Positions 1 through 60,380 of a DNA stretch of 64,000 nucleotides are shown here, one piece after another. Both the position numbers and the translations under genes were made by a program. Source of the DNA: Heptranchias perlo (taxonomy: Eukaryota); NCBI RefSeq assembly GCF_035084215.1, contig NC_090345.1, positions 3,906,001 through 3,970,000 on the forward strand, given 5' to 3'. The first letter of the stretch is position 1, and each line of letters opens with the position of its first letter. The notes below the pieces were generated by a model, which saw only the letters and a list, made by a program, of their open reading frames with translations, was not told the DNA's origin and did not search any database.

Positions 1-1747
1 ATCACTCCTGTGAAGAGTTTTGGGACATTTTACCACGTTAAATGCGCTATGTAAATGCAAGTTGTTGTTGTATATCCATTCTGTCTGAAATCAGCTGCCT
101 AAGTACAGCCCAGCCTTTCAATATGGAACATTCTGTCTCACTACACCCTCCCTTTATCCCCTGGGTCACCCATTGAGTGGCTTTAGTTCTTTAATGAGTC
201 ATTACAAGTTACAGACTGAAAGAATCGGCACCATTTGCCCCTCACTGAGTGAAACTTCTGTGAAGGGGTTGCCTCACAGTGGAGGGGGAGGAATCCAGTC
301 AAGGTGTTTTTTCCCCCTTAACTTTCTCCCCATTTTTTCCTACAGTCACTGACTCCTAATTGGGTGTAGTACCCTAGCTGCTGAGAGGTTGTGGGTTATT
401 TGGTCATGGGGGGCATCATAGCTGAGCCTGGTGTGTGCACGGTTTATTTTATTTTATTATCCTCTCTCGTTCACACTCATGCTCACACTTGCACGCCCAG
501 AATGAGTCACTGAATATTGATCCCCAGCTGGTTTGATTTTTTTTTTCCCTCTCTTGTGCCCTGCCCCCTGCCCCCTGCCCCCGGCCCCGGCCCCTCCTCC
601 TGAGATCAGCCTGAGACCTTCTTGCTCACTGCCACCCTAGAAGGGCCGTTTGCTCCGCAAGGCACTGAGGTGGGGGGAGTCCGTTAGAAATATGTTTAAC
701 TGTTTTCTGCATTTGAAATTATTTCCTTTTTTAAATCATTTTATATTGAAAACTTACTGTTTAAAACTACAGACAGGGTGACAGAAAAGGGTCTGTTATA
801 GAAGCTGAAACCGTGACGAGGTCTGGCCCATCCCGATCACCTGCACGATTTAGGAAAGAGCAGGGTTGTGAGACACAAGAGATCTGCTTCAGTTAATTCT
901 ACTATCCGCCCCAAGCATCCAGGTCACCCAGCTCCATGAGCATGGTCAAAATGGATTTAGAGTGAGCATCGCACACTATAATCGGAGCTGCTAACCAGTG
1001 CACCCACTACACAGAATCCCCAGTACACGTGACGTGGCAGAGTGTGATTTTGGGGAATATTGGCGAGAGTACGGGCAGTTTGCGATTGGGTAATGTTGGT
1101 GAGTGTAAGGCTTTGTCAAAAATTGAGTTCATGTGTAAAATAGCGGATGCTCAAACAATCCCACAGAAGGCGGTGAAAGGAGCCTCTCGACACCCACTCA
1201 CCCATTGCCCCTCATCGCCCACTGCCCCTTAAATCACCCCCTGACCCACTGCCCCTCATCGCCCCCTGCCCCGCATCATCTGAAGCAGAATCCAGGTTGT
1301 TAGATTTAATATTTAAGAGCTTGGTGACCTGAATAGTGGATCTCCACTGGGACCCGTTTCTGTGACTGCACCTGCAGGAGCTACCCTCTGATACTGAATC
1401 CACTCCCCCAGTTACCCCGGATCCTGCCAGGAACTCCCTGCCCAGGTTTCCTTAGGTAAAGTTGGGCCTTTAAGGCTATTGGACACTTGCGTTTTTATTA
1501 TTTCTCCTTATGCCACTCTTCCCCGTTTATTCTTGCCATCAGAAGTCAGTCTCCACAGAAGTGCTGCCAAGGGAGGGGGTGTCTCAAGTTTTATATGCAG
1601 TGTTACACGGCGTGACATTGTGGGTGAAGGTAGATCCCACAAACAGCAATGAGGTGACTGAGCAGTTAATCTGATTGTGATAAGGAAGGAATGTTCTCCA
1701 TACCTGGAGAATTCCTTGTTGTTATTACCTCGGCACCTCATCCACTA

Positions 1748-2137
1748 GCCTAAACATCCACTCCCTTCACCACCGGCGCACCGTGGCTGCAGTGTGTACT
1801 AGCAACGGGATGCACCGCAGCAACTCGCCAAGGCTTCTTCGACAGCACCTCCCAAACCTGCGATCTCTTCCACCTAGATGGACAAGGGCAGCAGGCACAT
1901 GGGAACAACACCACCTGCACGTTCCCCTCCAAGTCACTCGCCGTCCCGTTCCCTCATCGTTGCTGTGTTGAAATCCTGGAACTCCCTTCCTAACAGCACT
2001 GTGGGAGAACCTTCACCACACGGACTGCAGCGGCTCAAGAAGGCGGCTCACCACCCCCTTCTCAAGGGCAGTTAGGGATGGGCAATAAATGCCGGCCTCG
2101 CCAGCGACGCCCACATCCCAGGAACGAATTTTTAAAA
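1748..2137 (+). mobile_element. 3' fragment of the same EN-RT retrotransposon family
   Basis: Closely matches the reverse complement of 16100-16500 (HSLHHRRTVAAVC..LLKG, GGGATGGGCAATAAATGCCGG tail). Confidence 0.85.
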
Positions 2138-3366: not shown

Positions 3367-3534
3367 TCTCTACTAATGGGCCTCAGAACTAACCTCGGAA
3401 GGACGCTCACTACTACAATAGTATGACATTGGGATGGGCAATAAATGCCGGCCTTGCCACTGATACCCACATCCCAAGAACTTTTTTAAAAATGGACACT
3501 ATAAATGAACAGTGTAAAATTTGGAAAATGGGTC

Positions 3535-6908: not shown

Positions 6909-8890
6909 TGTGGCTCAGTGATAGCACTCTCGCCTCTATATCAGAAGATTGTGGGTTGCACTCCAGAGACTTGAGCACATAATCTAGGCTAACACTTCAG
7001 TGCAGTACTGAGGGAATGTTGTACTGTCTGAGGTGCCATCTTTTGGATGAGACATTAAACTGAGCCCCGTCTGGCCCCTCAGGTGCACGTAAAACTTCCC
7101 ATGACACTATTGCGAAGAAGAGCAGGGATGTTCTCCTCGGTGTCCAGGCGAATATTTATCCCTTGACCAACATAACTTTTTTTTAAAATTATTTATCTGG
7201 TCATTATCGCATTACTGTTTGTGGGACCTTGCTGCGTGCAAATTGGCTGCCGCATTTCCTACATTACAACAGTGACAAGGGAGGAAATAGCGGAGGCTCT
7301 GACCATCATTTTCCAATCCTCCATGGCTACAGGCGTATTGCCGGAGGATTGGAGGACTGCTAACATTGTACCGTTGTTTAAAAAGGGAGAAAAGGATAGG
7401 CCGAGTAATTACAGGCCAGTCAGTCTAAACTCGGTGGTGGGCAAATTATTGGAATCAATTCTGAGGGACAGCATAAATCGTCATTTAGAAAGACACGGAT
7501 TAATCAAGGACAGTCAGCATGGATTTGTTAAGGGAAGGTTGTGTCTGACTAACTTGATTGAATTTTTGAGGCGGTAACAAGGAGGGTCGATGAGGGTAAC
7601 GTGTTTGATGTAGTGTATACGGATTTTAGCAAGGTTTTTGACAAGGTCCCACATGGCAGACTGGTCAAAAAAGTAAAAGCCCATGTGATCCAAGAGAGAG
7701 TGGCAAGTTGGATCCAAAATTGGCTCAGTGGCAGGAAACAAAAAGTAATGGTTGACGGGTGTTTTTGCAACTGGAAGGCTGATTCCAATGGGATTCTGCA
7801 AGGCTCAGTACTAGGCCCCTTGCTTTTTGTGGTATATATTAATGATTTGGACTTGAATGTGGGAGGCTTGATCAGGAAGTTTGCAGATGACATAAAAATT
7901 GGCCATGTGGTTGATAGTGAGGAGGAAAGCTGTAGACTGCAGGAAGAGATCAATGTACTAGTCAGGTGGGCAGAAAAGTGGCAAATGGAATTCAATCCGG
8001 AGAAGTGTGAGGTAATGCATTTGTGGAGGGCAAACAAGGCAAGGGAGTACACAATAAATGGGAGGATACTGAGAGGTGTAGAGGAACAAAGGGACCTTGG
8101 AGTGCATGTCCACAGATCCCTGAAGGTAGCAGGACAGGTAGATAAGGTGGTTAAAAAGGCATACAGGATACTTTCCATTATTAGCCGAGGCATAGAATGT
8201 AAGAGCAGGGAGTTTATGCTGGAACTGTACAAAACATTGGTTAGGCCACAGCTTGAGTACTGCGTACAGTTCTGGTCACCACATTACAGGAAAGATGTGA
8301 TTGCATAGAGAGGGTACAGAGGAGATCTACAAGGATGTTGCCAGGACTGGAGAATTTTAGCTATGAGAAAAGTTTGGATAGGCTGGGGTTGTTTTCTTTG
8401 GAACAAAGGAGGCTGAGGGGAGATTTAATTGAGGTGTATAAAATTGTGACAGGACTAGATAGAGTGGATAGGGAGGACCTATTTCCCTTGGCAGTGGGGT
8501 CAGTGACCAGGGGGCATAGATTGAAAGTAATTGGTAGAAGGATTAGAGAGGAGCTGAGAATTAATTTCACCCAGAGGGTGGTGGGGGTCTGGAACTCACT
8601 GCCTGAAACGGTGGTAGAGGCAGAAACCCTCAACTCATTTAAAAAGTACCTGGATGTGCACCTGAAGTGCTGTAACCTACAGGGCTACGGACCAAGTGCT
8701 GGAAAGTGGGATTAAGCTAGATAGCTCTTTTTTGGCCAGCACGGACACGATGGGCCAAATGGCCTCCTTCTGTACCGTAACTTTCTATGATTCTATGACT
8801 AAACTTAAAAAGTACTTCATTGGCTGTGAAACGCTTTGGGATGTCCTGAGGTCATGAAAGGCGCTATATAAATGCAGGTTCTTTCTTTAC
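6909..8890 (+). mobile_element. tRNA-derived Deu-domain SINE (AmnSINE1/SacSINE1-like), split by the CR1
   Basis: TGGCTCAGTG A box, GGTGCCATCTTTTGGATGAGAC..CAAATTGGCTGCC Deu-like core, GCGCTATATAAATGCA tail. Confidence 0.8.
7277..8798 (+). mobile_element. 5'-truncated CR1 LINE (RT) inserted in a Deu-SINE
   Basis: NYRPVSL, QGSVLGP, FADD, with frameshifts; (TTCTATGA)2 tail; SINE sequence resumes at about 8796. Confidence 0.92.
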
Positions 8891-15610: not shown

Positions 15611-16089
15611 GGGGGGAGAAAACTTTAGAGCTAAAAGGAAAAACTGAAAATGCTGGAAAACCCAAGATAAAAACAGAAAATGTGGAAATACTGTGGCAAA
15701 TGGAATTCAATGTAGACAAATGTGAGGTCATCCACTTTGGACCAAAAAAGGATAGAACAGGGTACTTTCTAAATGGTAAAAAGTTAAAAACAGTGGATGT
15801 CCAAAGGGGCTTAGGGGTTCAGGTACATAGATCATTCAAGTGTCATGAACAGGTACAGAAAATAATCAATAAGGCTAATGGAATGCTGGCCTTTATATCT
15901 AGAGGACTAGAGTACAAGGGGGCAGAAGTGATGCTGTAGCTATACAAAACCCTGGTTAGACCACACCTGGAGTACTGTGAGCAGTTCTGGGCACCGCACC
16001 TTCGGAAGGACATATTGGCCTTGGAGGGAGTGCAGCGTAGGTTTACTAGAATGATACCCAGACTTCAAGGGTTAAGTTACGAGGAGAGA

Positions 16090-19000
16090 TTTTTTTTTTT
16101 TTATTCGTTCACGGGATGTGGGCGTCGCTGGCAAGGCCGGCATTTATTGCCCATCCCTAATTGCCCTTGAGAAGGTGGTGGTGAGCCGCCTTCTTGAACC
16201 GCTGCAGTCCGTGTGGTGACGGTTCTCCCACAGTGCTGTTAGGAAGGGAGTTCCAGGATTTTGACCCGGCGACAATGAAGGAACGGCGATATATTTCCAA
16301 GTCGGGATGGTGTGTGACTTGGAGGGGAACGTGCAGGTGGTGTTGTTCCCATGCGCCTGCTGCCCTTGTCCTTCTAGGTGGTAGAGGTCGCGGGTTTGGG
16401 AGGTGCTGTCGAAGAAGCCTTGGCGAGTTGCTGCAGTGCATCCTGTGGATGGTGCACACTGCAGCCACAGTGCGCCGGTGGTGAAGGGAGTGAATGTTTA
16501 GGGTGGTGGATGGGGTGCCAATCAAGCGGGCTGCTTTATCTTGGATGGTGTCGAGCTTCTTGAGTGTTGTTGGAGCTGCACTCATCTAGGCAAGTGGAGA
16601 GTATTCCATCACACTCCTGACTTGTGCCTTGTAGATGGTGGAAAGGCTTTGGGGAGTCAGGAGGTGAGTCACTCGCCGCAGAATACCCAGCCTCTGACCT
16701 GCTCTCGTAGCCACAGTATTTATATGGCTGGTCCAGTTAAGTTTCTGGTCAATGGTGACCCCCAGGATGTTGATGGTGGGGGATTCGGCGATGGTAATGC
16801 CGTTGAATGTCATGGGGAGGTGGTTAGACTCTCTCTTGTTGGAGATGGTCATTGCCTGGCACTTATCTGGCGCGAATGTTACTTGCCACTTATCAGCCCA
16901 AGCCTGGATGTTGTCCAGGTCTTGCTGCATGCGGGCTCGGACTGCTTCATTATCTGAGGGGTTGCGAATGGAACTGAACACTGTGCAGTCATCAGCGAAC
17001 ATCCCCATTTCTGACCTTATGATGGAGGGAAGGTCATTGATGAAGCAGCTGAAGATGGTTGGGCCTAGGACACTGCCCTGAGGAACTCCTGCAGCAATGC
17101 CCTGGGGCTGAGATGCTTGGCCTCCAACAACCACTACCATCTTCCTTTGTGCTAGGTATGACTCCAGCCACTGGAGAGTATTCCCCCTGATTCCCATTGA
17201 CTTCAATTTTACTAGGGCTCCTTGGTGCCACACTCGGTCAAATGCTGCCTTGATGTCAAGGGCAGTCACTCTCACCTCACCTCTGGAATTCAGCTCTTTT
17301 GTCCATGTTTGGACCAAGGCTGTAATGAGGTCTGGAGCCGAGTGGTCCTGGCGGAACCCAAACTGAGCATCGGTGAGCAGGTTATTGGTGAGTAAGTGCC
17401 GCTTGATAGCACTGTCGACGACACCTTCCATCACTTTGCTGATGATTGAGAGTAGACTGATGGGGCGGTAATTGGCCGGATTGGATTTGTCCTGCTTTTT
17501 GTGGACAGGACATACCTGGGCAATTTTCCACATTGTCGGGTGGATGCCAGTGTTGTAGCTGTACTGGAACAGCTTGGCTAGAGGCGCAGCTAGTTCTGGA
17601 GCACAAGTCTTCAGCACTACAGCTGGGATGTTGTCGGGGCCCATAGCCTTTGCTGTATCCAGTGCACTCAGCCGTTTCTTGATATCACGTGGAGTGAATC
17701 GAATTGGCCGAAGACTGGCTTCCGTGATGGTGGGGATATCGGGAGGAGGCTGAGATGGATTATCCACTCGGCACTTCTGGCTGAAGATGGTTGCAAACGC
17801 TTCAGCCTTGTCTTTTGCACTCACGTGCTGGACTCCGCCATCATTGAGAATGGGGATGTTTGCAGAGCCTCCTCCTCCCGTTAGTTGTTTAATTGTCCAC
17901 CACCATTCACGACTGGATATGGCAGGACTGCAGAGCTTTGATCTGATCCGTTGGTTGTGGAATCGCTTAGCTCTGTCGATAGCATGTTGCTTCCGCTGTT
18001 TAGCATGCATGTAGTCCTGAGTTGTAGCTTCACCAGGTTGGCACCTCATTTTTAGGTACGCCTGGTGCTGCTCCTGGCATGCTCTTCTACACTCCTCACT
18101 GAACCAGGGTTGATCCCCTGGCTTGTTGGTAATGGTAGAGTGAGGAATATGCCGGGTCATGAGGTTACAGATTGTGCTGGAATACAATTCTGCTGCTGCT
18201 GATGGCCCACAGCGCCTCATGGATGCCCAGTTTTGAGCTGCTAGATCTGTTCTGAATCTATCCCATTTAGCACGGTGGTAGTGCCACACAACACGTTGGA
18301 TGGTGTCCTCAGTGCGAAGACGGGATTTCATCTCCACGAGGACTGTGCGGTGGTCACTCCTACCAATACTGTCATGGACAGATGCATTTGCGACAGGTAG
18401 ATTGGTGAGGACGAGGTCAAGTAAGTTTTTCCCTCGTGTTGGTTCGCTCACCACTTGCCGCAGGCCCAGTCTAGCAGCTATGTCCTTCAGGACTCGGCCA
18501 GCTCGGTCAGTAGTGGTGCTACCGAGCCACTCTTGGTGATGGACATTGAAGTCCCCCACCCAGAGTACATTTTGTGCCCTTGCTACCCTCAGTGCTTCCT
18601 CCAAGTGGTGTTCAACATGGAGGAGGACTGATTCATCAGCTGAGGGAGGACGGTAGGTGGTAATCAGCAGGAGGTTTCCTTGCCCATGTTTGACCTGATG
18701 CCATGAGATTTCATGGGGTCCAGAGTCAATGTTGAGGACTCCCAGGGCCACTCCCTCCTGACTGTATATCACTGTACCGCCACCTCTGGTGGGTCTGTCC
18801 TGCCGGTGGGACAGGACATACCCAGGGATGGTGATGGAAGAGTCTGGGACGTTGGCTGAAAGATATGATTCTGTGAGTATGGCTATGTCAGGCTGTTGCT
18901 TGACTAGTCTGTGGGACAGCTCTCCCAATTTTGGCACAAGTCCCCAGATGTTAGTAAGGAGGGTCGACTGGGCTTGGTGTTTTGCCGTTGTCGTGTCCGG

Positions 19001-19410
19001 TGCCTAGCGGTCCGATGCCGGGTGGTCCGTCCGGTTTTATTCTTATTATGACTTTTCGTAGCGAGATTTTACAACTGAGTGGCTTGCTAGGCCATTTCAG
19101 AGGGCAATTAAGAATCAACCACATTGCTGTGGGTCTGGAGTCACATATAGGCCAGACCGGGTAAGGACGGCAGGTTTCCTTCCCTAAAGGACATTAGTGA
19201 ACCAGATGGGTTTTTACGATAATCCGGTAGTTTCATGCACACCATTACTGATACTAGTATTTTAATTCCAGATTTTTATTTTAATTAATTGAATTTAATT
19301 AATTGAATTTAAATTCGCCAGCTGCCGTGGCGGGATTTGAACTCATGACTCTGGATTTTAGTCCAGGCCTCTGGATTACTAGCCCAGTAACATAACCACT
19401 ATGCTACCGT
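16090..19410 (-). mobile_element. Near full-length non-LTR retrotransposon: tRNA-derived Pol III head + single APE-endonuclease/RT ORF + poly(A)
   Basis: A box TAGCATAGTGG (19406-19396), B box GAGTTCAAATCC (19344-19333). ORF motifs NIWGL, GDFN, SDH, PQGSVLGP, FADD, WNSLP. T-run 16090-16102 is the poly(A); AGATT duplicated at 16087 and 19411. Confidence 0.93.
16157..19003 (-). pseudogene. EN-RT ORF2-like frame broken by a single in-frame TAG (16586-16588)
   Basis: The 783-aa and 142-aa ORFs are in one frame; the related copy near 22350 has TGG at this position. Confidence 0.9.
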
Positions 19411-19912
19411 AGATTACACAAATTGGGGTTGTATTCTCCAGAGTTTAGGATGTTAAGGGGTGATCTGATCGAAGTTTATAAGATATTAAGGGGAACAGAT
19501 AGGGTGGATAGAGAGAAACTATTTCCGCTGGTTGGGGATTCTAGGAGTAGGGGGCACAGTCTAAAAATTAGAGCCAGACCTTTCAGGAATGAGATTAGAA
19601 AACACTTCTACACACAAAGGGTGGTAGAAGTTTGGAACTCTCTTCCGCAAACCGCAATTGATGCTTGCTCAATTGCTAATTTTAAATCTGAGATAGCTAG
19701 CTTTTTGCCAAACAAAGGTATTAAGGGATATGGGCCAAAGGCAGGTATATGGAGCTAGATCACAGATCAGCCATGATCTTATCAAATGGCGGAGCAGGCA
19801 CGAGGGGCTGAATGGCCTACTCCTGTTCCTATGTTCCTAAATACACAGCAGATCCAGCAGTGTCAGAGACAGCTCGAGCACAGAATCTTCATCGGAACCG
19901 TAAAACTAATTA

Positions 19913-21034: not shown

Positions 21035-21247
21035 CCTCTCCTGAGAATACTTGGTGCTGATACGATGTCCAAAACAGAAGTGATATCCCTTCCCAAGCAC
21101 TAATCCAAAACCACAAAAATTCACCCAAAAATATTTACATTTAAAAAAAATTTCCAAACCTTTTGTCAAATATAATCTCTCAAGTTCTGATCACACAGGC
21201 CTGAGCAGTAGGCAGTGCCAGGAATCGTACTTAAAAACATACGTCGT

Positions 21248-22695
21248 TTTTTAAAAAATTGTTCTCGGGATGTGGGCGTCACTGGCTGTATTTATTGCCC
21301 ATCCCTGAGAAGGTGGTGGTGAGCTGCCTTCTTGAGCCGCTGCAGTCCGTGTGGTGAAGGTTCTCCCACAGTGCTGTTAGGGAGGGAGCTCCAGGATAGT
21401 GGCCCAGTGAGATGAAGGAACGACGATATGTGTTCACGTCAGGATGGTGTGTCGCTTGGAGGCGGTGATTGCTCTCTTGTCCTTCTTGAGGGTAGAGGCC
21501 CTATTGCTGCATTGCTTTAAACAGGATTTATAAAGTTACTGCCACCACAGTGCAGTTATAATACAGGCTGGGTGGAAGCATCAGATAGTCCAGAACATCT
21601 TACAAAAAAACATAACTGTGCCCTCAGCTCTGTGCATGGAGAAGGCAAAGTCTTACGAAGACAGACAGTAGTGCACCAGTTAACACAAGAAGTCAATCCC
21701 GGAAGAGAGGCAAGAGTAGCTACTCTCGACATCAAGGCAGCGTTCAACCAAGGGGCCCTCGCAAAACTGAAGTCAAATAGAAAACCCTTCAATAGATGGA
21801 GCCATATCTGACATAAAGGTTGTCAGAGGCCAATCACAGCCCCAGGACATCGCTGTAGGAGTTTCTCAGGGAAGCGTCCTTGTTCCAACTATCATCAACT
21901 GCTTCATCGATGACCTTCACTCCATCATAAGGTCAGGAACAGGACTGGTCACTGACAATTCCACAGTGTTCAGCTCCATTCACAACTCCTCTGATAATGA
22001 AGCAGCCCATGCCAGCCTACAGCAGGACCTGAATAACATCCTGGATTGGGCTGACAAGTGGTAGTTAATGACCATCTCCAACCAGAGAAAGCCCAGCCAC
22101 CTCCCTTTGACTTTCAATGGCATCACCATCGACTTCCCACCCCATCCCACCCACCCCCACATCCATCCAATATCCTGGGGATCACCACTGACTGAAAGCT
22201 GAACTGGATTAGCTACATCAACACTGTGGCTACAAATGCATGGCAGAGGCGGAGTACTCTGTGACACATATCTCATCTCCTAACCCCCTCAAAGCCTTTC
22301 CATCATCTACAAGGCCTAAGTAAGAAGTGTGCTGGCATACACAATGCTTGCCTGGCTGCAGCGTGTAAGATGTACAGGATGCACTGCAGCAACTCGCCAC
22401 GGTTACTTCGACAGCGACAGCACCTCCCCACCCCGCCTCGGGGACCAAGGGGAGCAATGTTGTGAGAGCACCATCACCTCCAAGTTGCCCTCCATCCTGT
22501 CTCGGGCATTTATCACCATTCCTTTGTCACTGGGTCAATATCCTGGATTTTCCCACCTAGCACCATTGTGGGAATACCTTCACCACACGGACTGCAAAAA
22601 GGAAGATTTACTCTCCTCCCCCGACCATCTCAGGTCAGGTAGGGATGGCCAATAAATGCAGCCTTTGCCCATTTCAACGACAATTTTTTTTTTTA
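21248..22695. mobile_element. Two degraded copies of the EN-RT family back to back (3' end on - at 21248-21560; RT to 3' end on + at 21660-22695)
   Basis: ATLDIKAAF and PQGSVL-like remnants plus the shared 3' tail, in opposite orientations. Confidence 0.75.
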
Positions 22696-22859
22696 AAAGA
22701 GTTGTATAACATGCCTTTGTATTCTATTTTAATGCACTTGCTACTCTTTTTGTTTTGATGGCTGCATTAATATAGTTCACAAAGAAATGTTAAACAAACC
22801 CATTAACCAGCACGCTGTCAGAGGAAGTTAAAGCCTGCTGTGAGCAATGTGATCCTTAC

Positions 22860-59157: not shown

Positions 59158-59415
59158 AGGGTAAAGTAGCCTAGTGGTTTTATAACTGGACTAGTAACCC
59201 AGAAGTCACGAGTTCAAATCCTACCATGAAACTGAATTCAAAAATCTGGTAATTTGTGGGATAGTACAAGAAAACGACCATGAAAACTGCTAACTGGTTC
59301 ACTAATGTCCTGCAGGGAAAGGAACCTGCCACCCCTCCCTGGTCTGGTCTACTATTAACTCCAGTCCCAATCTACAAGGTTAGCTCAGGGGAATTGGGGA
59401 TTGGCAATAAATACA
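59158..59415 (+). mobile_element. Second short partner SINE
   Basis: TAGCCTAGTGG, GAGTTCAAATCC, CTGGTTCACTAATGTCC body and GGGATTGGCAATAAAT tail. Confidence 0.78.
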
Positions 59416-60380
59416 ATCTTACTAGTTTTAATAAAGTGCATTAGGTGAACAAGTTCAGCACCTCATTTATTCAGATGCACAGTACATGGATATCTGTCAC
59501 ACCTCATCCACAAGGAGGAGAAAGAAAGGCAATACAACCAGCTGAAGAAGCTTTAAACTTGAACTCTAGACTGCATGGATTTATATTCAAATTTTCAGTA
59601 TGCATGGTGCAGTTTTTGCACCCCTGGAACTCCAGGTTAAACTTAGCCCAGATCTATAGGATGTAACAGTCCTGTATGAAATGAAATGTGACAACTTCAG
59701 CCCAGCTCCCACATAAAACCACCCATAATTTGGCACCAAAGCAACAATTCATAATCAGATGGCTGATATGAAGACATCACACTAATTCAAGTTAAGAGAT
59801 GCTCTTCTGAGAGCTGAGTTGGAGTGCAGCTGAGGGAAGTTAATTCTGCAGCTGGATGTGGTGCATGTAACTTGGGAGTGCCAGAAACGGGGAAAAACAT
59901 TCCATTCCCCAGGTCAAACAACCTTCATTTTGATTAAACACACAGTCTCAAAATCCTGAGGAGAAGTAAACCTTTAAATCAGAATAAAACAGAAAATTAG
60001 GAGTCACCCAATGACTCAGGTTAAAAAAAATACAACAACCATACATAACAGAATATCCCAGATTCTACCCTAGTCTGTGTTGATCTTAGCTATGGTGAAA
60101 AAAGGGACACTACAGTTTGCTTCAACTACTCTGGATTAGGGAGGTGAAAAAAAATGAGCATTGGGCAATAAGGGAGTCTACGGAGATATCCTCAACGATC
60201 GAATAAAATACATGATGTCCAGCTTTATCGATGAAAAACGACCAACTGGATGACCTACAAGAGGATGGCCAGCACATGTGGAACTAGACCCCGGCAGAAG
60301 CAATAATGCATTCAAGATGGGATGAGAAAATAGGTAGCGCCCCCCCCAACACACAAAAAGTCATCTCTTTGTACACTCAC

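What the first reader, a model, noticed from the sequence alone, without database searches (positions are those of the whole stretch)
16090..19410. Candidate Pol III-transcribed, protein-coding retrotransposon ('autonomous SINE'): tRNA head fused to EN-RT with no TTTT in 3.3 kb
Seen: the element is bounded by a duplicated AGATT inside a host CR1, so head, ORF and poly(A) appear to have inserted as one unit. Its 5' end is a tRNA-type internal promoter (A box TAGCATAGTGG, B box GAGTTCAAATCC), followed about 330 nt later by an APE endonuclease + RT frame, with no room for ORF1. Reading every line, I find no AAAA on + between 16090 and 19410, so the sense strand has zero TTTT and only about 7 TTT, against about 20 AAAA. 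Neighbouring CR1s (e.g. 7277-8798) have many sense TTTT. Established: T4 terminates vertebrate Pol III; LINEs are normally Pol II-transcribed and SINEs are non-coding. Inference: selection against Pol III terminators over a whole coding region implies full-length Pol III transcription of an RT-encoding RNA. The first downstream TTTT is in the flank at 15949-15946. ORF1-less LINEs (RTE, some fish L2) are known, so the unusual part is the tRNA promoter plus terminator avoidance. I cannot check whether this family is already described.
Basis: partly seen in the sequence, partly recalled or inferred. Interest (0 to 1): 0.93.

Follow-up and report, generated by a model that had tools for sequence, protein, structure and literature searches.

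The report
LINE family with tRNA-SINE head
A young, very abundant jumping gene in a shark-type genome encodes its own copying enzyme yet is built, end to end, like the short non-coding elements read by RNA polymerase III, which would be a first if experiments confirm it.

Summary
Window 19410-16092 (minus strand) is one insertion with a 5-bp target duplication. It has a tRNA-derived head with intact A and B boxes, about 400 nt without an ORF, and one endonuclease-RT frame. The sense strand has no TTTT.

It is not a one-off chimera. In contigs of the likely source animal, head, body, leader and 5' ORF have about the same depth. This scan's first readers noted the same architecture on other DNA of this genome (24 notes, unchecked).

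The TTTT argument is weaker than claimed: only 2-4 are expected (P 0.01-0.11). T-run avoidance is nevertheless real and specific to T. T3+ runs number 5 against 12.2 under synonymous-codon permutation (P 0.002), while A, C and G runs are as expected.

One new point: 6 of the 6 other tails of this family in the window end in AATAAA, then a T-run, then an A-run. That is the layout of Pol III "T+" SINEs. The focal copy has lost its T-run.

Full-length Pol III transcription is the best reading (about 0.55) but is untested. Seven literature searches found no such element.

The parts
19411..19415 (-). 5' copy of the target-site duplication (AATCT, sense reading)
   Evidence: empty-site joint 16086->19411, 5 shared letters.
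19320..19410 (-). tRNA-derived head. A box 19406-19396, B box 19344-19333. Carries a 19-nt insertion (19369-19351) relative to the old SINE copies.
   Evidence: boxes read directly. (tRNA model 18.7 bits, below the 29 threshold). (alignment with two old SINEs). (no cloverleaf in the minimum-energy fold, z -0.5).
19071..19319 (-). SINE-type body, shared with short SINE copies. Deletion-type joints leave the element at 19060-19152.
   Evidence: old SINEs at 39137-39415 and 59165-59420. (joints, e.g. 19070->16167 in 26 contigs of X1 and 12 of X10).
19035..19070 (-). A-rich linker (56% A), a possible fossil A-tail of the captured SINE. Contains AATAAA at 19041.
   Evidence: In one search, X10 loose ends at 19070 (486 contigs) run into a homologous stretch and then a run of at least 10 A.
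18961..19034 (-). GC-rich, CpG-rich leader (68% GC, CpG o/e 1.13, 4% T), probably the original short LINE 5' UTR. Other copies carry about 10 more letters at 18962.
   Evidence: (X1 loose end at 18962 in 100 contigs; depth 1.2M in X1 but 55 in X10 at 19008).
16589..19003 (-). Open frame of 805 codons without ATG. APE endonuclease about 18952-18341, reverse transcriptase about 17497-16751.
16586..16588 (-). In-frame stop codon, private to this copy.
   Evidence: (at 16587, 9.02M of 9.17M depth in X1 reads another letter).
16157..16585 (-). Last 142 codons of the same frame plus the final stop (16159-16157), which lies inside the tail shared with the SINEs.
16103..16167 (-). 3' tail shared with the SINEs. 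AATAAA at 16148. Ends in a single T where older copies have T4-T11.
16092..16102 (-). A-tail (the A run 16102-16090 is 13 long; its last two A belong to the duplication).
16087..16091 (-). 3' copy of the target-site duplication.
1696..2137 (+). Older 5'-truncated LINE copy of the same family (87.5% identity over 417 nt). Its tail ends in T5 then A4, with a candidate duplication AGAATWC right after.
21249..21480 (-). Another 5'-truncated LINE copy. Its tail ends in T6 then A6.
3431..3491 (+). Short tail-only copy ending in T6 then A5. A candidate duplication follows directly.
39137..39445 (+). Old SINE (head + body + LINE tail, about 80% identity). The 3' end reads TTAT and then an A-rich run.
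59165..59425 (+). Old SINE (head + body + LINE tail). The 3' end reads T4 and then an A-rich run.

Best explanation
The element is a slightly damaged member of a very abundant family of single-ORF (APE endonuclease + RT) LINEs. Full-length copies of this family begin with the head and body of a tRNA-derived SINE.

Most likely working, step by step:
1. TFIIIC and TFIIIB bind the A and B boxes, and RNA polymerase III starts at the first base of the head (inferred).
2. Pol III reads through about 3.3 kb that is kept free of T-runs (the avoidance is shown; the cause is inferred).
3. In the ancestral layout it stops in a T-run placed directly after the conserved tail, and the RNA is A-tailed through the AAUAAA about 45 nt upstream, as in T+ SINEs. 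The layout is shown in 6 of the 6 other tails in the window; the process is inferred.
4. The uncapped RNA is translated from a non-AUG start into the EN-RT protein (inferred; the frame has no ATG).
5. The protein nicks the target and copies the RNA by target-primed reverse transcription. This leaves a 5-bp duplication and, usually, 5' truncation (both shown).

Short SINEs with the same head and the same tail ride on the same machinery.

The head was probably captured when the RT switched from the 5' end of a LINE RNA with a short GC-rich leader onto an A-tailed SINE RNA. The A-rich linker at 19070-19035 would be the trace of that event (inferred).
For: Unit insertion: the duplication and the empty-site joint.

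Family-wide head. X1 depth is:
- leader: 1.20M at 19008 and 1.26M at 19058;
- body: 1.58M at 19064, 1.61M at 19220 and 1.27M at 19238;
- head: 1.25-1.51M at 19347-19357;
- start of the endonuclease: 1.38M at 18882.
There is no step at the SINE/LINE border. The listed short-form joints have depth of 2,824 or less.

The measure can see uncoupling. In X10, another species, depth is 55 at 19008, against 754k in the body and 294k in the endonuclease.

This scan holds 24 first-reader notes of the same 3.3-kb architecture on other DNA of this genome. They are unchecked leads.

The depth gradient in X1 is typical of a LINE: 19.0M at the tail falling to 2.7M in the endonuclease.

Promoter: the A and B boxes are intact and 52 nt apart.

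T-run avoidance:
- T3+ runs are 5 against 12.2 under synonymous-codon permutation (P 0.002).
- A, C and G runs are at expectation.
- T|T codon junctions are 10 against 24.5 expected.
- The antisense strand has 20 T4 runs.
- Three other LINE pieces in the window are not depleted.

Terminator layout: 6 of the 6 other family tails read tail, T-run, A-run. They are T5A4, T6A5, T6A6, T11A4 in a related family, and two decayed SINE tails. Two or three of them (1696-2137, 21249-21480 and, in the related family, 21668-22698) carry LINE coding sequence, so they came from LINE RNA rather than SINE RNA. TTTTAAAA occurs 14 times in the window against 1.6 expected, and 4 of these sit at such tails.

This matches the definition and the copy tables of T+ SINEs in PMC12101331 (passages read).
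Against: - There is no direct evidence on the polymerase, the 5' end chemistry or translation.
- The absence of T4 alone is weak (P 0.08-0.11 once dinucleotides or codons are kept).
- The focal copy has only one T before its A-tail. At least 900 contigs of X1 share that T1 + A8 or longer form (loose ends at 16094/16095). So the youngest copies lack a terminator of their own.
- To my knowledge (recalled) no natural Pol III transcript of 3 kb is known.
- An uncapped RNA with an AUG-less frame would need unusual export and translation.
- Contig word depth is a rough measure, and states that some joints and loose ends were not counted.
- AATAAA occurs at 19280 and 19041 inside the 5' part.
Confidence: 0.55

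Rival explanations
1. The family is real, but the long RNA is made by RNA polymerase II, from an internal promoter in the SINE-derived part or the CpG-rich leader, or by host read-through. The head is kept because transcription happens to start at or before it. Only the short SINEs use Pol III.
For: All LINEs studied so far are described as Pol II elements, with R2 as a Pol I co-transcript (PMC10886601 passages; PMC5786205 Discussion). The leader has CpG o/e 1.13 and 68% GC, like LINE promoters. AATAAA lies 45 nt before the A-tail. The youngest tails have no T-run. The T4 absence alone is not significant.
Against: A start in the leader would lose the head, yet head and leader have equal depth. 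Nothing but a Pol III type-2 promoter is known to fix a start at the first base of such a head, and it does so for the SINEs with the same head. T-specific run avoidance and T-run + A-run ends on LINE-derived copies are left unexplained.
Confidence: 0.27
2. Headed copies arise again and again. At each insertion the RT jumps from the 5' end of a headless LINE RNA onto an abundant SINE RNA, so headed copies are dead-end chimeras, not a lineage.
For: Template-switch chimeras of LINE-1 with small RNAs are well documented (PMC13174262 passages). The A-rich linker looks like a SINE A-tail.
Against: De novo junctions would vary in A-length and in LINE end point, and would give a depth dip and piles of loose ends at 19035-19070. 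X1 shows depth of 1.2-1.6M across that stretch and no listed pile there, while X10 does show one. The head variant with the 19-nt insertion has the same depth as the leader.
Confidence: 0.08
3. The tRNA-like head is an RNA-processing signal. RNase P (and RNase Z) would cut the element out of host co-transcripts, as HDV-like ribozymes do for R2 and RTE.
For: Ribozyme-defined 5' ends exist in several LINE clades (PMC5786205 Discussion).
Against: The head starts at about tRNA position 4. It is not called by ARAGORN, scores below threshold for the tRNA model and does not fold as a cloverleaf. RNase Z would cut the head off. No Rfam ribozyme matched in 15900-19600.
Confidence: 0.05
4. A one-off chimera, or a nested insertion, at this locus only.
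For: A single pair of duplications flanks the whole element.
Against: Depth of over a million across the junction in X1. 24 notes of the same structure elsewhere in this genome. Only one tail is present, so it is not a LINE nested inside a SINE.
Confidence: 0.02

Closest known systems
T+ SINEs of mammals (B2, Dip, Ves, Can). PMC12101331, passages read.
   Same: tRNA-type A/B-box head. AATAAA, then a T-run terminator, then a short A-tail at the 3' end. Copies such as T5 followed by A5 look the same as tails at 2130, 3484 and 21249 here.
   Different: T+ SINEs are 100-600 bp, non-coding, use L1 in trans and are described from mammals. This element is 3.3 kb, encodes its own EN-RT and comes from an elasmobranch-type genome. 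The youngest copies have lost the T-run.
tRNA-SINE / LINE pairs with a common tail, e.g. HE1/HER1 of sharks and rays. I saw only a table row in PMC3747384. The original paper, Ogiwara et al. 1999, was not seen, and I could not test identity with HE1/HER1.
   Same: A tRNA-derived SINE and a LINE of elasmobranchs share the 3' tail.
   Different: In the classical pair only the tail is shared. Here the LINE also carries the SINE head and body.
SINEs built from both ends of a LINE (Bov-tA/Bov-B, RTE- and Vingi-derived bodies). Kojima 2018, PMC5786205, Introduction and Discussion read.
   Same: The SINE equals small-RNA head + LINE 5' part + LINE 3' part. Template switching is proposed as the way the head is added.
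   Different: In that model the head is added to an internally deleted, non-coding LINE, and the text states that SINEs cannot encode a protein. Here the head sits on the full coding LINE.
Small-RNA/LINE-1 chimeras (U6/L1, tRNA/L1). PMC13174262, passages read.
   Same: A small Pol III RNA sequence is fused 5' of a LINE within one pair of duplications.
   Different: Those are single dead-end insertions: a few to 21 loci for the newly found types. tRNA pieces are mostly half-length and antisense. Here the fusion is in sense, complete, and amplified as a family.
R2 and other ribozyme-processed LINEs. Discussed in PMC5786205; details are recalled.
   Same: A LINE RNA not made from its own Pol II promoter, uncapped, with an ORF that lacks a conventional AUG context.
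   Different: R2 is a Pol I co-transcript cut by an HDV-like ribozyme. No ribozyme was found here, and the promoter type is Pol III.
Helenus/Ajax (TRIMp3): LTR retrotransposons with tRNA or 5S promoters. PMC10886601, passages read.
   Same: A Pol III promoter module captured by a class of retrotransposon that normally uses Pol II.
   Different: They are non-autonomous, under 1 kb and of LTR type.

Membership tests
APE-type LINE (non-LTR retrotransposon) | APE endonuclease and reverse transcriptase in one ORF | tested here: met
   PF03372, PF14529 and PF00078, all above their cut-offs.
APE-type LINE (non-LTR retrotransposon) | Target-site duplication, 3' A-tail and a 5'-truncation gradient among copies | tested here: met
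   (X1 depth 19.0M at the tail falling to 2.7M in the endonuclease).
tRNA-derived SINE (SINE2) | tRNA-derived head with A and B boxes at the 5' end | tested here: met
   Boxes read. tRNA model 18.7 bits, below the threshold of 29.
tRNA-derived SINE (SINE2) | Short (100-600 bp) and non-coding | tested here: not met
   3319 nt with a 948-codon EN-RT frame.
tRNA-derived SINE (SINE2) | Transcribed by RNA polymerase III | not testable with these tools
   Only contigs of an RNA run were available.
T+ class of Pol III retroposons | AATAAA followed by a T>=4 or TCT>=3 terminator and then an A-tail | tested here: inconclusive
   Met in 5 of the 6 other family tails in the window, decayed in the sixth. 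Not met in the focal copy, which has T1 then A13.
RTE clade | Single ORF, very short 5' UTR, no ORF1 | tested here: met
   The leader is 74 nt if the SINE part is set aside.
RTE clade | Placement of the RT within the RTE clade on a tree | not tested
   No named reference sequences were available. The protein search gave only unnamed or gene-model hits and the Atlas gave no clade names.
CR1/L2/Jockey-type LINEs | Similarity of the RT and of the C-terminal region to CR1-like elements | tested here: inconclusive
   42% and 29% identity to the CR1-like piece at 7284-8260. Only a WNSLP motif in common with the host repeat (E 0.018). The clade motifs are recalled, not tested.
One-off template-switch chimera (U6/L1 type) | The junction is present at a single locus | tested here: not met
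   (depth above 1M across the junction in X1). (notes on other DNA of this genome).

The most novel reading that the evidence does not exclude
An autonomous retrotransposon whose complete 3.3-kb protein-coding RNA is made by RNA polymerase III. It would have an internal tRNA-type promoter, a body purged of T-runs, and a built-in T-run terminator with AAUAAA-dependent A-tailing. The RNA would be translated without a cap and without an AUG. That would make it the first natural protein-coding Pol III gene in an animal and a third polymerase solution for LINEs, after Pol II and Pol I. It would also show that SINEs can arise from such an element by simple internal deletion.
Probability: 0.5. Interest if true: 0.95.

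Novelty: new variant of a known kind. Interest (0 to 1): 0.85.

Why it matters
Textbooks and current reviews separate LINEs (coding, Pol II) from SINEs (non-coding, Pol III). The papers read here say so outright. A family that joins the two would change several things:
- It would alter how the origin of SINE heads and bodies is explained: deletion of a headed LINE instead of heads added to deleted LINEs.
- It would give a natural test of how long a Pol III transcript can be, and of whether such an RNA can be exported and translated.
- It would explain why this family became so abundant in this genome.

The idea is directly testable with standard RNA and chromatin assays on shark tissue.

Tried and rejected
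Fetching other copies
- Two exact-pattern scans of metagenome contigs gave 0 hits, so there is no shark DNA in that collection.
- The protein search returned only 16 hits. The close ones are LINE pieces inside shark and ray gene models, 73-83% identity over 9-32% of the query.
- As a result I read no other full-length copy myself.

Raw reads
- X23, the only raw-read run laid, comes from another species. Only 200 reads were laid, so it gave no copy-number profile.

RNA evidence
- X5 is labelled RNA only by guess and is contigs. It covers the whole element but cannot show starts, strand or polymerase.

Rfam and folding
- No ribozyme or other family reached threshold in 15900-19600.
- The 5' 471 nt fold somewhat better than shuffles (z -2.8). 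I draw no IRES claim from that.

Clade
- The Atlas gave about-940-aa EN-RT clusters without clade names. The clade is left open.

Rejected readings
- Nested LINE-in-SINE: there is only one tail.
- One-off chimera: rejected by the depth.
- T-run + A-run as a target preference: the focal target has none, and candidate duplications follow the A-run at 2137 and 3491. Those duplications were read by eye and are imperfect, 6 of 7 and 7 of 9.

Majority variants
- I checked the 9 listed variants that read A on the plus strand. None creates a sense TTTT. 487 further variants were not shown.

Literature
- Seven searches found no tRNA-headed or Pol III-driven autonomous LINE.
- Repbase, Dfam and subscription journals could not be searched.
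- Supplements were closed and not requested. The supplementary tables of Kojima 2018 could list relevant families.
Full report
WHAT IS THERE

Read on the minus strand, window 19410-16092 is one retroposed unit. AATCT stands at 19415-19411 and again at 16091-16087. Contigs of three runs hold the uninterrupted host repeat, joining 16086 to 19411 and skipping 3324 with 5 shared letters: 20 contigs in X1, 2 in X5 and 3 in X10.

From 5' to 3' the unit consists of:
- A tRNA-derived head, 19410-19320. The A box TAGCATAGTGG is at 19406-19396 and the B box GAGTTCAAATCC at 19344-19333.
- A SINE-type body, 19319-19071.
- An A-rich linker, 19070-19035 (56% A).
- A GC-rich leader, 19034-18961 (68% GC, CpG o/e 1.13, 4% T).
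- A frame open from 19003 that holds Exo_endo_phos, Exo_endo_phos_2 and RVT_1. It has one in-frame stop at 16588-16586 and a final stop at 16159-16157.
- A 65-nt tail with AATAAA at 16148.
- One T and an A run.

There is no sense ORF of 60 aa or more upstream of 19003 and no ATG in the frame before the endonuclease domain.

The head is only tRNA-like. ARAGORN calls nothing. The Rfam tRNA model gives 18.7 bits against a threshold of 29, with a Thr-type anticodon loop. The head does not fold as a cloverleaf.

THE T-RUN CLAIM

The count is right: 0 TTTT and 7 TTT in 3321 sense bases, against 35 overlapping AAAA. The first TTTT downstream starts at 15949, 140 nt past the end.

The expectation, however, is small:
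- 4.2 T4 runs from mononucleotide shuffles (P 0.010);
- 2.1 from dinucleotide shuffles (P 0.108);
- 2.07 when synonymous codons are permuted within the ORF (P 0.083).
So 'no TTTT' alone proves little.

The stronger result concerns T3+ runs:
- They number 5 against 12.2 under codon permutation (P 0.002).
- A3+, C3+ and G3+ runs sit at expectation: 36 against 37.2, 40 against 39.4 and 32 against 32.8.
- Codon junctions of the type T|T number 10 against 24.5 expected.
- The antisense strand has 20 T4 runs against about 14.6 expected.

Three other LINE pieces in the window show no depletion: 6, 1 and 2 T4 runs at or above expectation. They are old and short. An older copy of the same family (1696-2129) has no T3 in 434 nt against 2.4-2.6 expected.

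The avoidance is therefore real, strand-specific and base-specific. It is measured on one copy of one lineage.

ONE-OFF OR FAMILY

I laid four runs on 15700-19800 at 85% likeness.

X1 (DNA contigs, probably the source animal):
- 587,202 pieces were laid.
- Summed word depth falls from 19.0M at the tail to 2.7M in the endonuclease, the usual 5'-truncation profile.
- It then stays level: 1.38M at 18882, 1.20M at 19008, 1.26M at 19058, 1.58M at 19064, 1.61M at 19220, 1.27M at 19238 and 1.25-1.51M at 19347-19357.
- There is a local dip to 0.47-0.75M at 18975-18982. Other copies differ there by small indels, and 100 contigs leave the alignment at 18962 with about 10 extra letters.
- There is no step at the SINE/LINE border. 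The short-form joints listed have depth of 2,824 or less.

X10 (another species) shows that the same measure can see uncoupling: depth is 55 at 19008 and 307-437 at 18975-18982, against 754k in the body and 294k at 18882. Also in X10, 486 contigs leave at 19070 into a homologous stretch followed by at least 10 A, and 582 leave at 19411 into unrelated flanks.

I conclude that in the source genome this head variant and this leader belong to the same molecules. In the other species, the body and the LINE are not joined by this leader.

Limits of this evidence:
- Word depth is rough.
- says that some joints and loose ends were not counted.
- No listed piece spans the whole element.
- I could not fetch another full-length copy.

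This scan's first readers flagged the same 3.1-3.4-kb architecture on other DNA of this genome: 24 notes hold the words 'Pol III LINE'. None has a second-stage check, so I use them as leads that agree.

RELATION TO THE SINES

Two old SINEs in the window (39137-39445 and 59165-59425, about 80% identity) have the head, the body and then the LINE tail. They lack the 19-nt insertion in the head (19369-19351) and the AT-rich duplications.

One search lists many different joints between 19060-19152 and 16155-16215, for example 19070->16167 in 26 contigs of X1 and 12 of X10. So short forms arose several times. The SINE/LINE partnership is older than the present headed copies.

The A-rich linker followed by a short GC-rich leader suggests how the head was acquired. 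The RT would have switched from the 5' end of a LINE RNA onto the A-tail of a SINE RNA, as in small-RNA/L1 chimeras (PMC13174262 passages). Here the product then amplified. This origin is inferred.

A 16-letter tail motif, allowing up to 3 mismatches, gives 12 matches in the window. Seven are tails of this family or of a related one, and 5 are chance matches.

The six non-focal tails all end in conserved tail, T-run, A-run:
- T5A4 at 2126;
- T6A5 at 3482;
- T6A6 at 21256-21245;
- T11A4 at 22684 (the related family);
- T4 plus an A-rich run at 59421;
- TTAT plus an A-rich run at 39434.

Two of them (1696-2137 and 21249-21480), and the related 21668-22698, carry LINE coding sequence. They therefore derive from LINE RNA, not SINE RNA. 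Imperfect candidate duplications follow the A-run at 2137 and 3491 (by eye), which places the T-run inside the copied unit. TTTTAAAA occurs 14 times in the window against 1.6 expected, and 4 of these are at such tails.

This is the layout that defines T+ SINEs: AATAAA, then a Pol III terminator, then an A-tail that results from A-tailing of the terminated Pol III transcript. The B2 copies listed in that paper look the same (PMC12101331, abstract and passages).

The focal copy, and at least 900 X1 contigs that share its tail to 16094/16095, have one T followed by eight or more A. So the youngest copies have no terminator of their own.

READING

Three marks of a Pol III unit coincide:
- an intact type-2 promoter exactly at the inherited 5' end;
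- a body that avoids T-runs;
- in the older layout, a T-run at the 3' end.

A 5' end that is passed on through retrotransposition requires transcription to start at the first base of the head. That is what this promoter does for the SINEs. I therefore take full-length Pol III transcription as the best explanation (0.55).

The main rival is Pol II transcription with the head as a passenger (0.27). It is favoured by precedent, by the CpG-rich leader and by the terminator-less young tails. It does not explain how the head is retained, nor the T-run features.

The other rivals are recurrent de novo chimeras (0.08), RNase P-type processing (0.05) and a one-off event (0.02). Each is disfavoured for the reasons given in its field.

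COMPARISON AND NOVELTY

The element passes the tests for an APE-type LINE. It fails the 'short and non-coding' test for a SINE.

The clade is open. The single ORF and short leader fit RTE. The similarity to the CR1-like neighbour is modest. No named references were available.

I could not test whether the pair equals HE1/HER1 of elasmobranchs. I saw only a table row and a mention.

Seven full-text searches found no autonomous LINE with a small-RNA head or Pol III transcription. Two papers by a Repbase curator state the opposite as the rule. Repbase, Dfam and non-open journals were not searchable, and supplements were closed.

VERDICT

I rate the novelty as a new variant of a known kind, which would be categorically new in mechanism if Pol III is shown. 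Interest is 0.85.

Noticed in passing
window 2126-2137, 3482-3491, 21245-21256, 22684-22698, 39434-39445, 59421-59431: All six other tails of this LINE/SINE family (one from a related family) end in a T-run directly followed by an A-run. This is the layout of mammalian T+ SINEs, and I have not seen it described outside mammals.
   Followed up: partly
window 21668-22698 (+): 5'-truncated copy of a related LINE family (about 50% aa and about 70% nt identity) with a T11 A4 end. It lies next to an inverted tail fragment of the focal family at 21249-21480.
   Followed up: partly
window 46905-46942 (-): A 38-nt stretch 97% identical to the SINE body (element positions 230-267), standing alone in otherwise unrelated sequence. 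It could be a conserved core shared with other repeats, or an exapted piece.
   Followed up: no
window 15700-16086 and 19411-19800 (+): The host repeat interrupted by the element is itself extremely abundant (X1 depth 2-4M). It carries an open RT-C-terminal type frame at 19423-19758.
   Followed up: no
whole window: TTTTAAAA occurs 14 times against 1.6 expected from shuffles. Only 4 are explained by the family tails. One (7181) lies inside another repeat.
   Followed up: partly
window 15900-19600: Runs of six differently coded organisms hold 64-93% of the sampled 31-letter words of this stretch, so near-identical copies exist across several species. Four runs guessed to be RNA, from the source sample, hold 70-73%.
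   Followed up: partly
window 18962 and 16587: This copy lacks about 10 letters that other copies have just upstream of the endonuclease. Its in-frame stop is private (98% of depth reads another letter). At 19008, 99.9% of depth differs from the window.
   Followed up: partly
window 19273-19316: An AT-rich internal duplication in the body (two copies of a ~19-nt unit). It is absent from the old SINEs, and read laying skipped it as a repeat.
   Followed up: no
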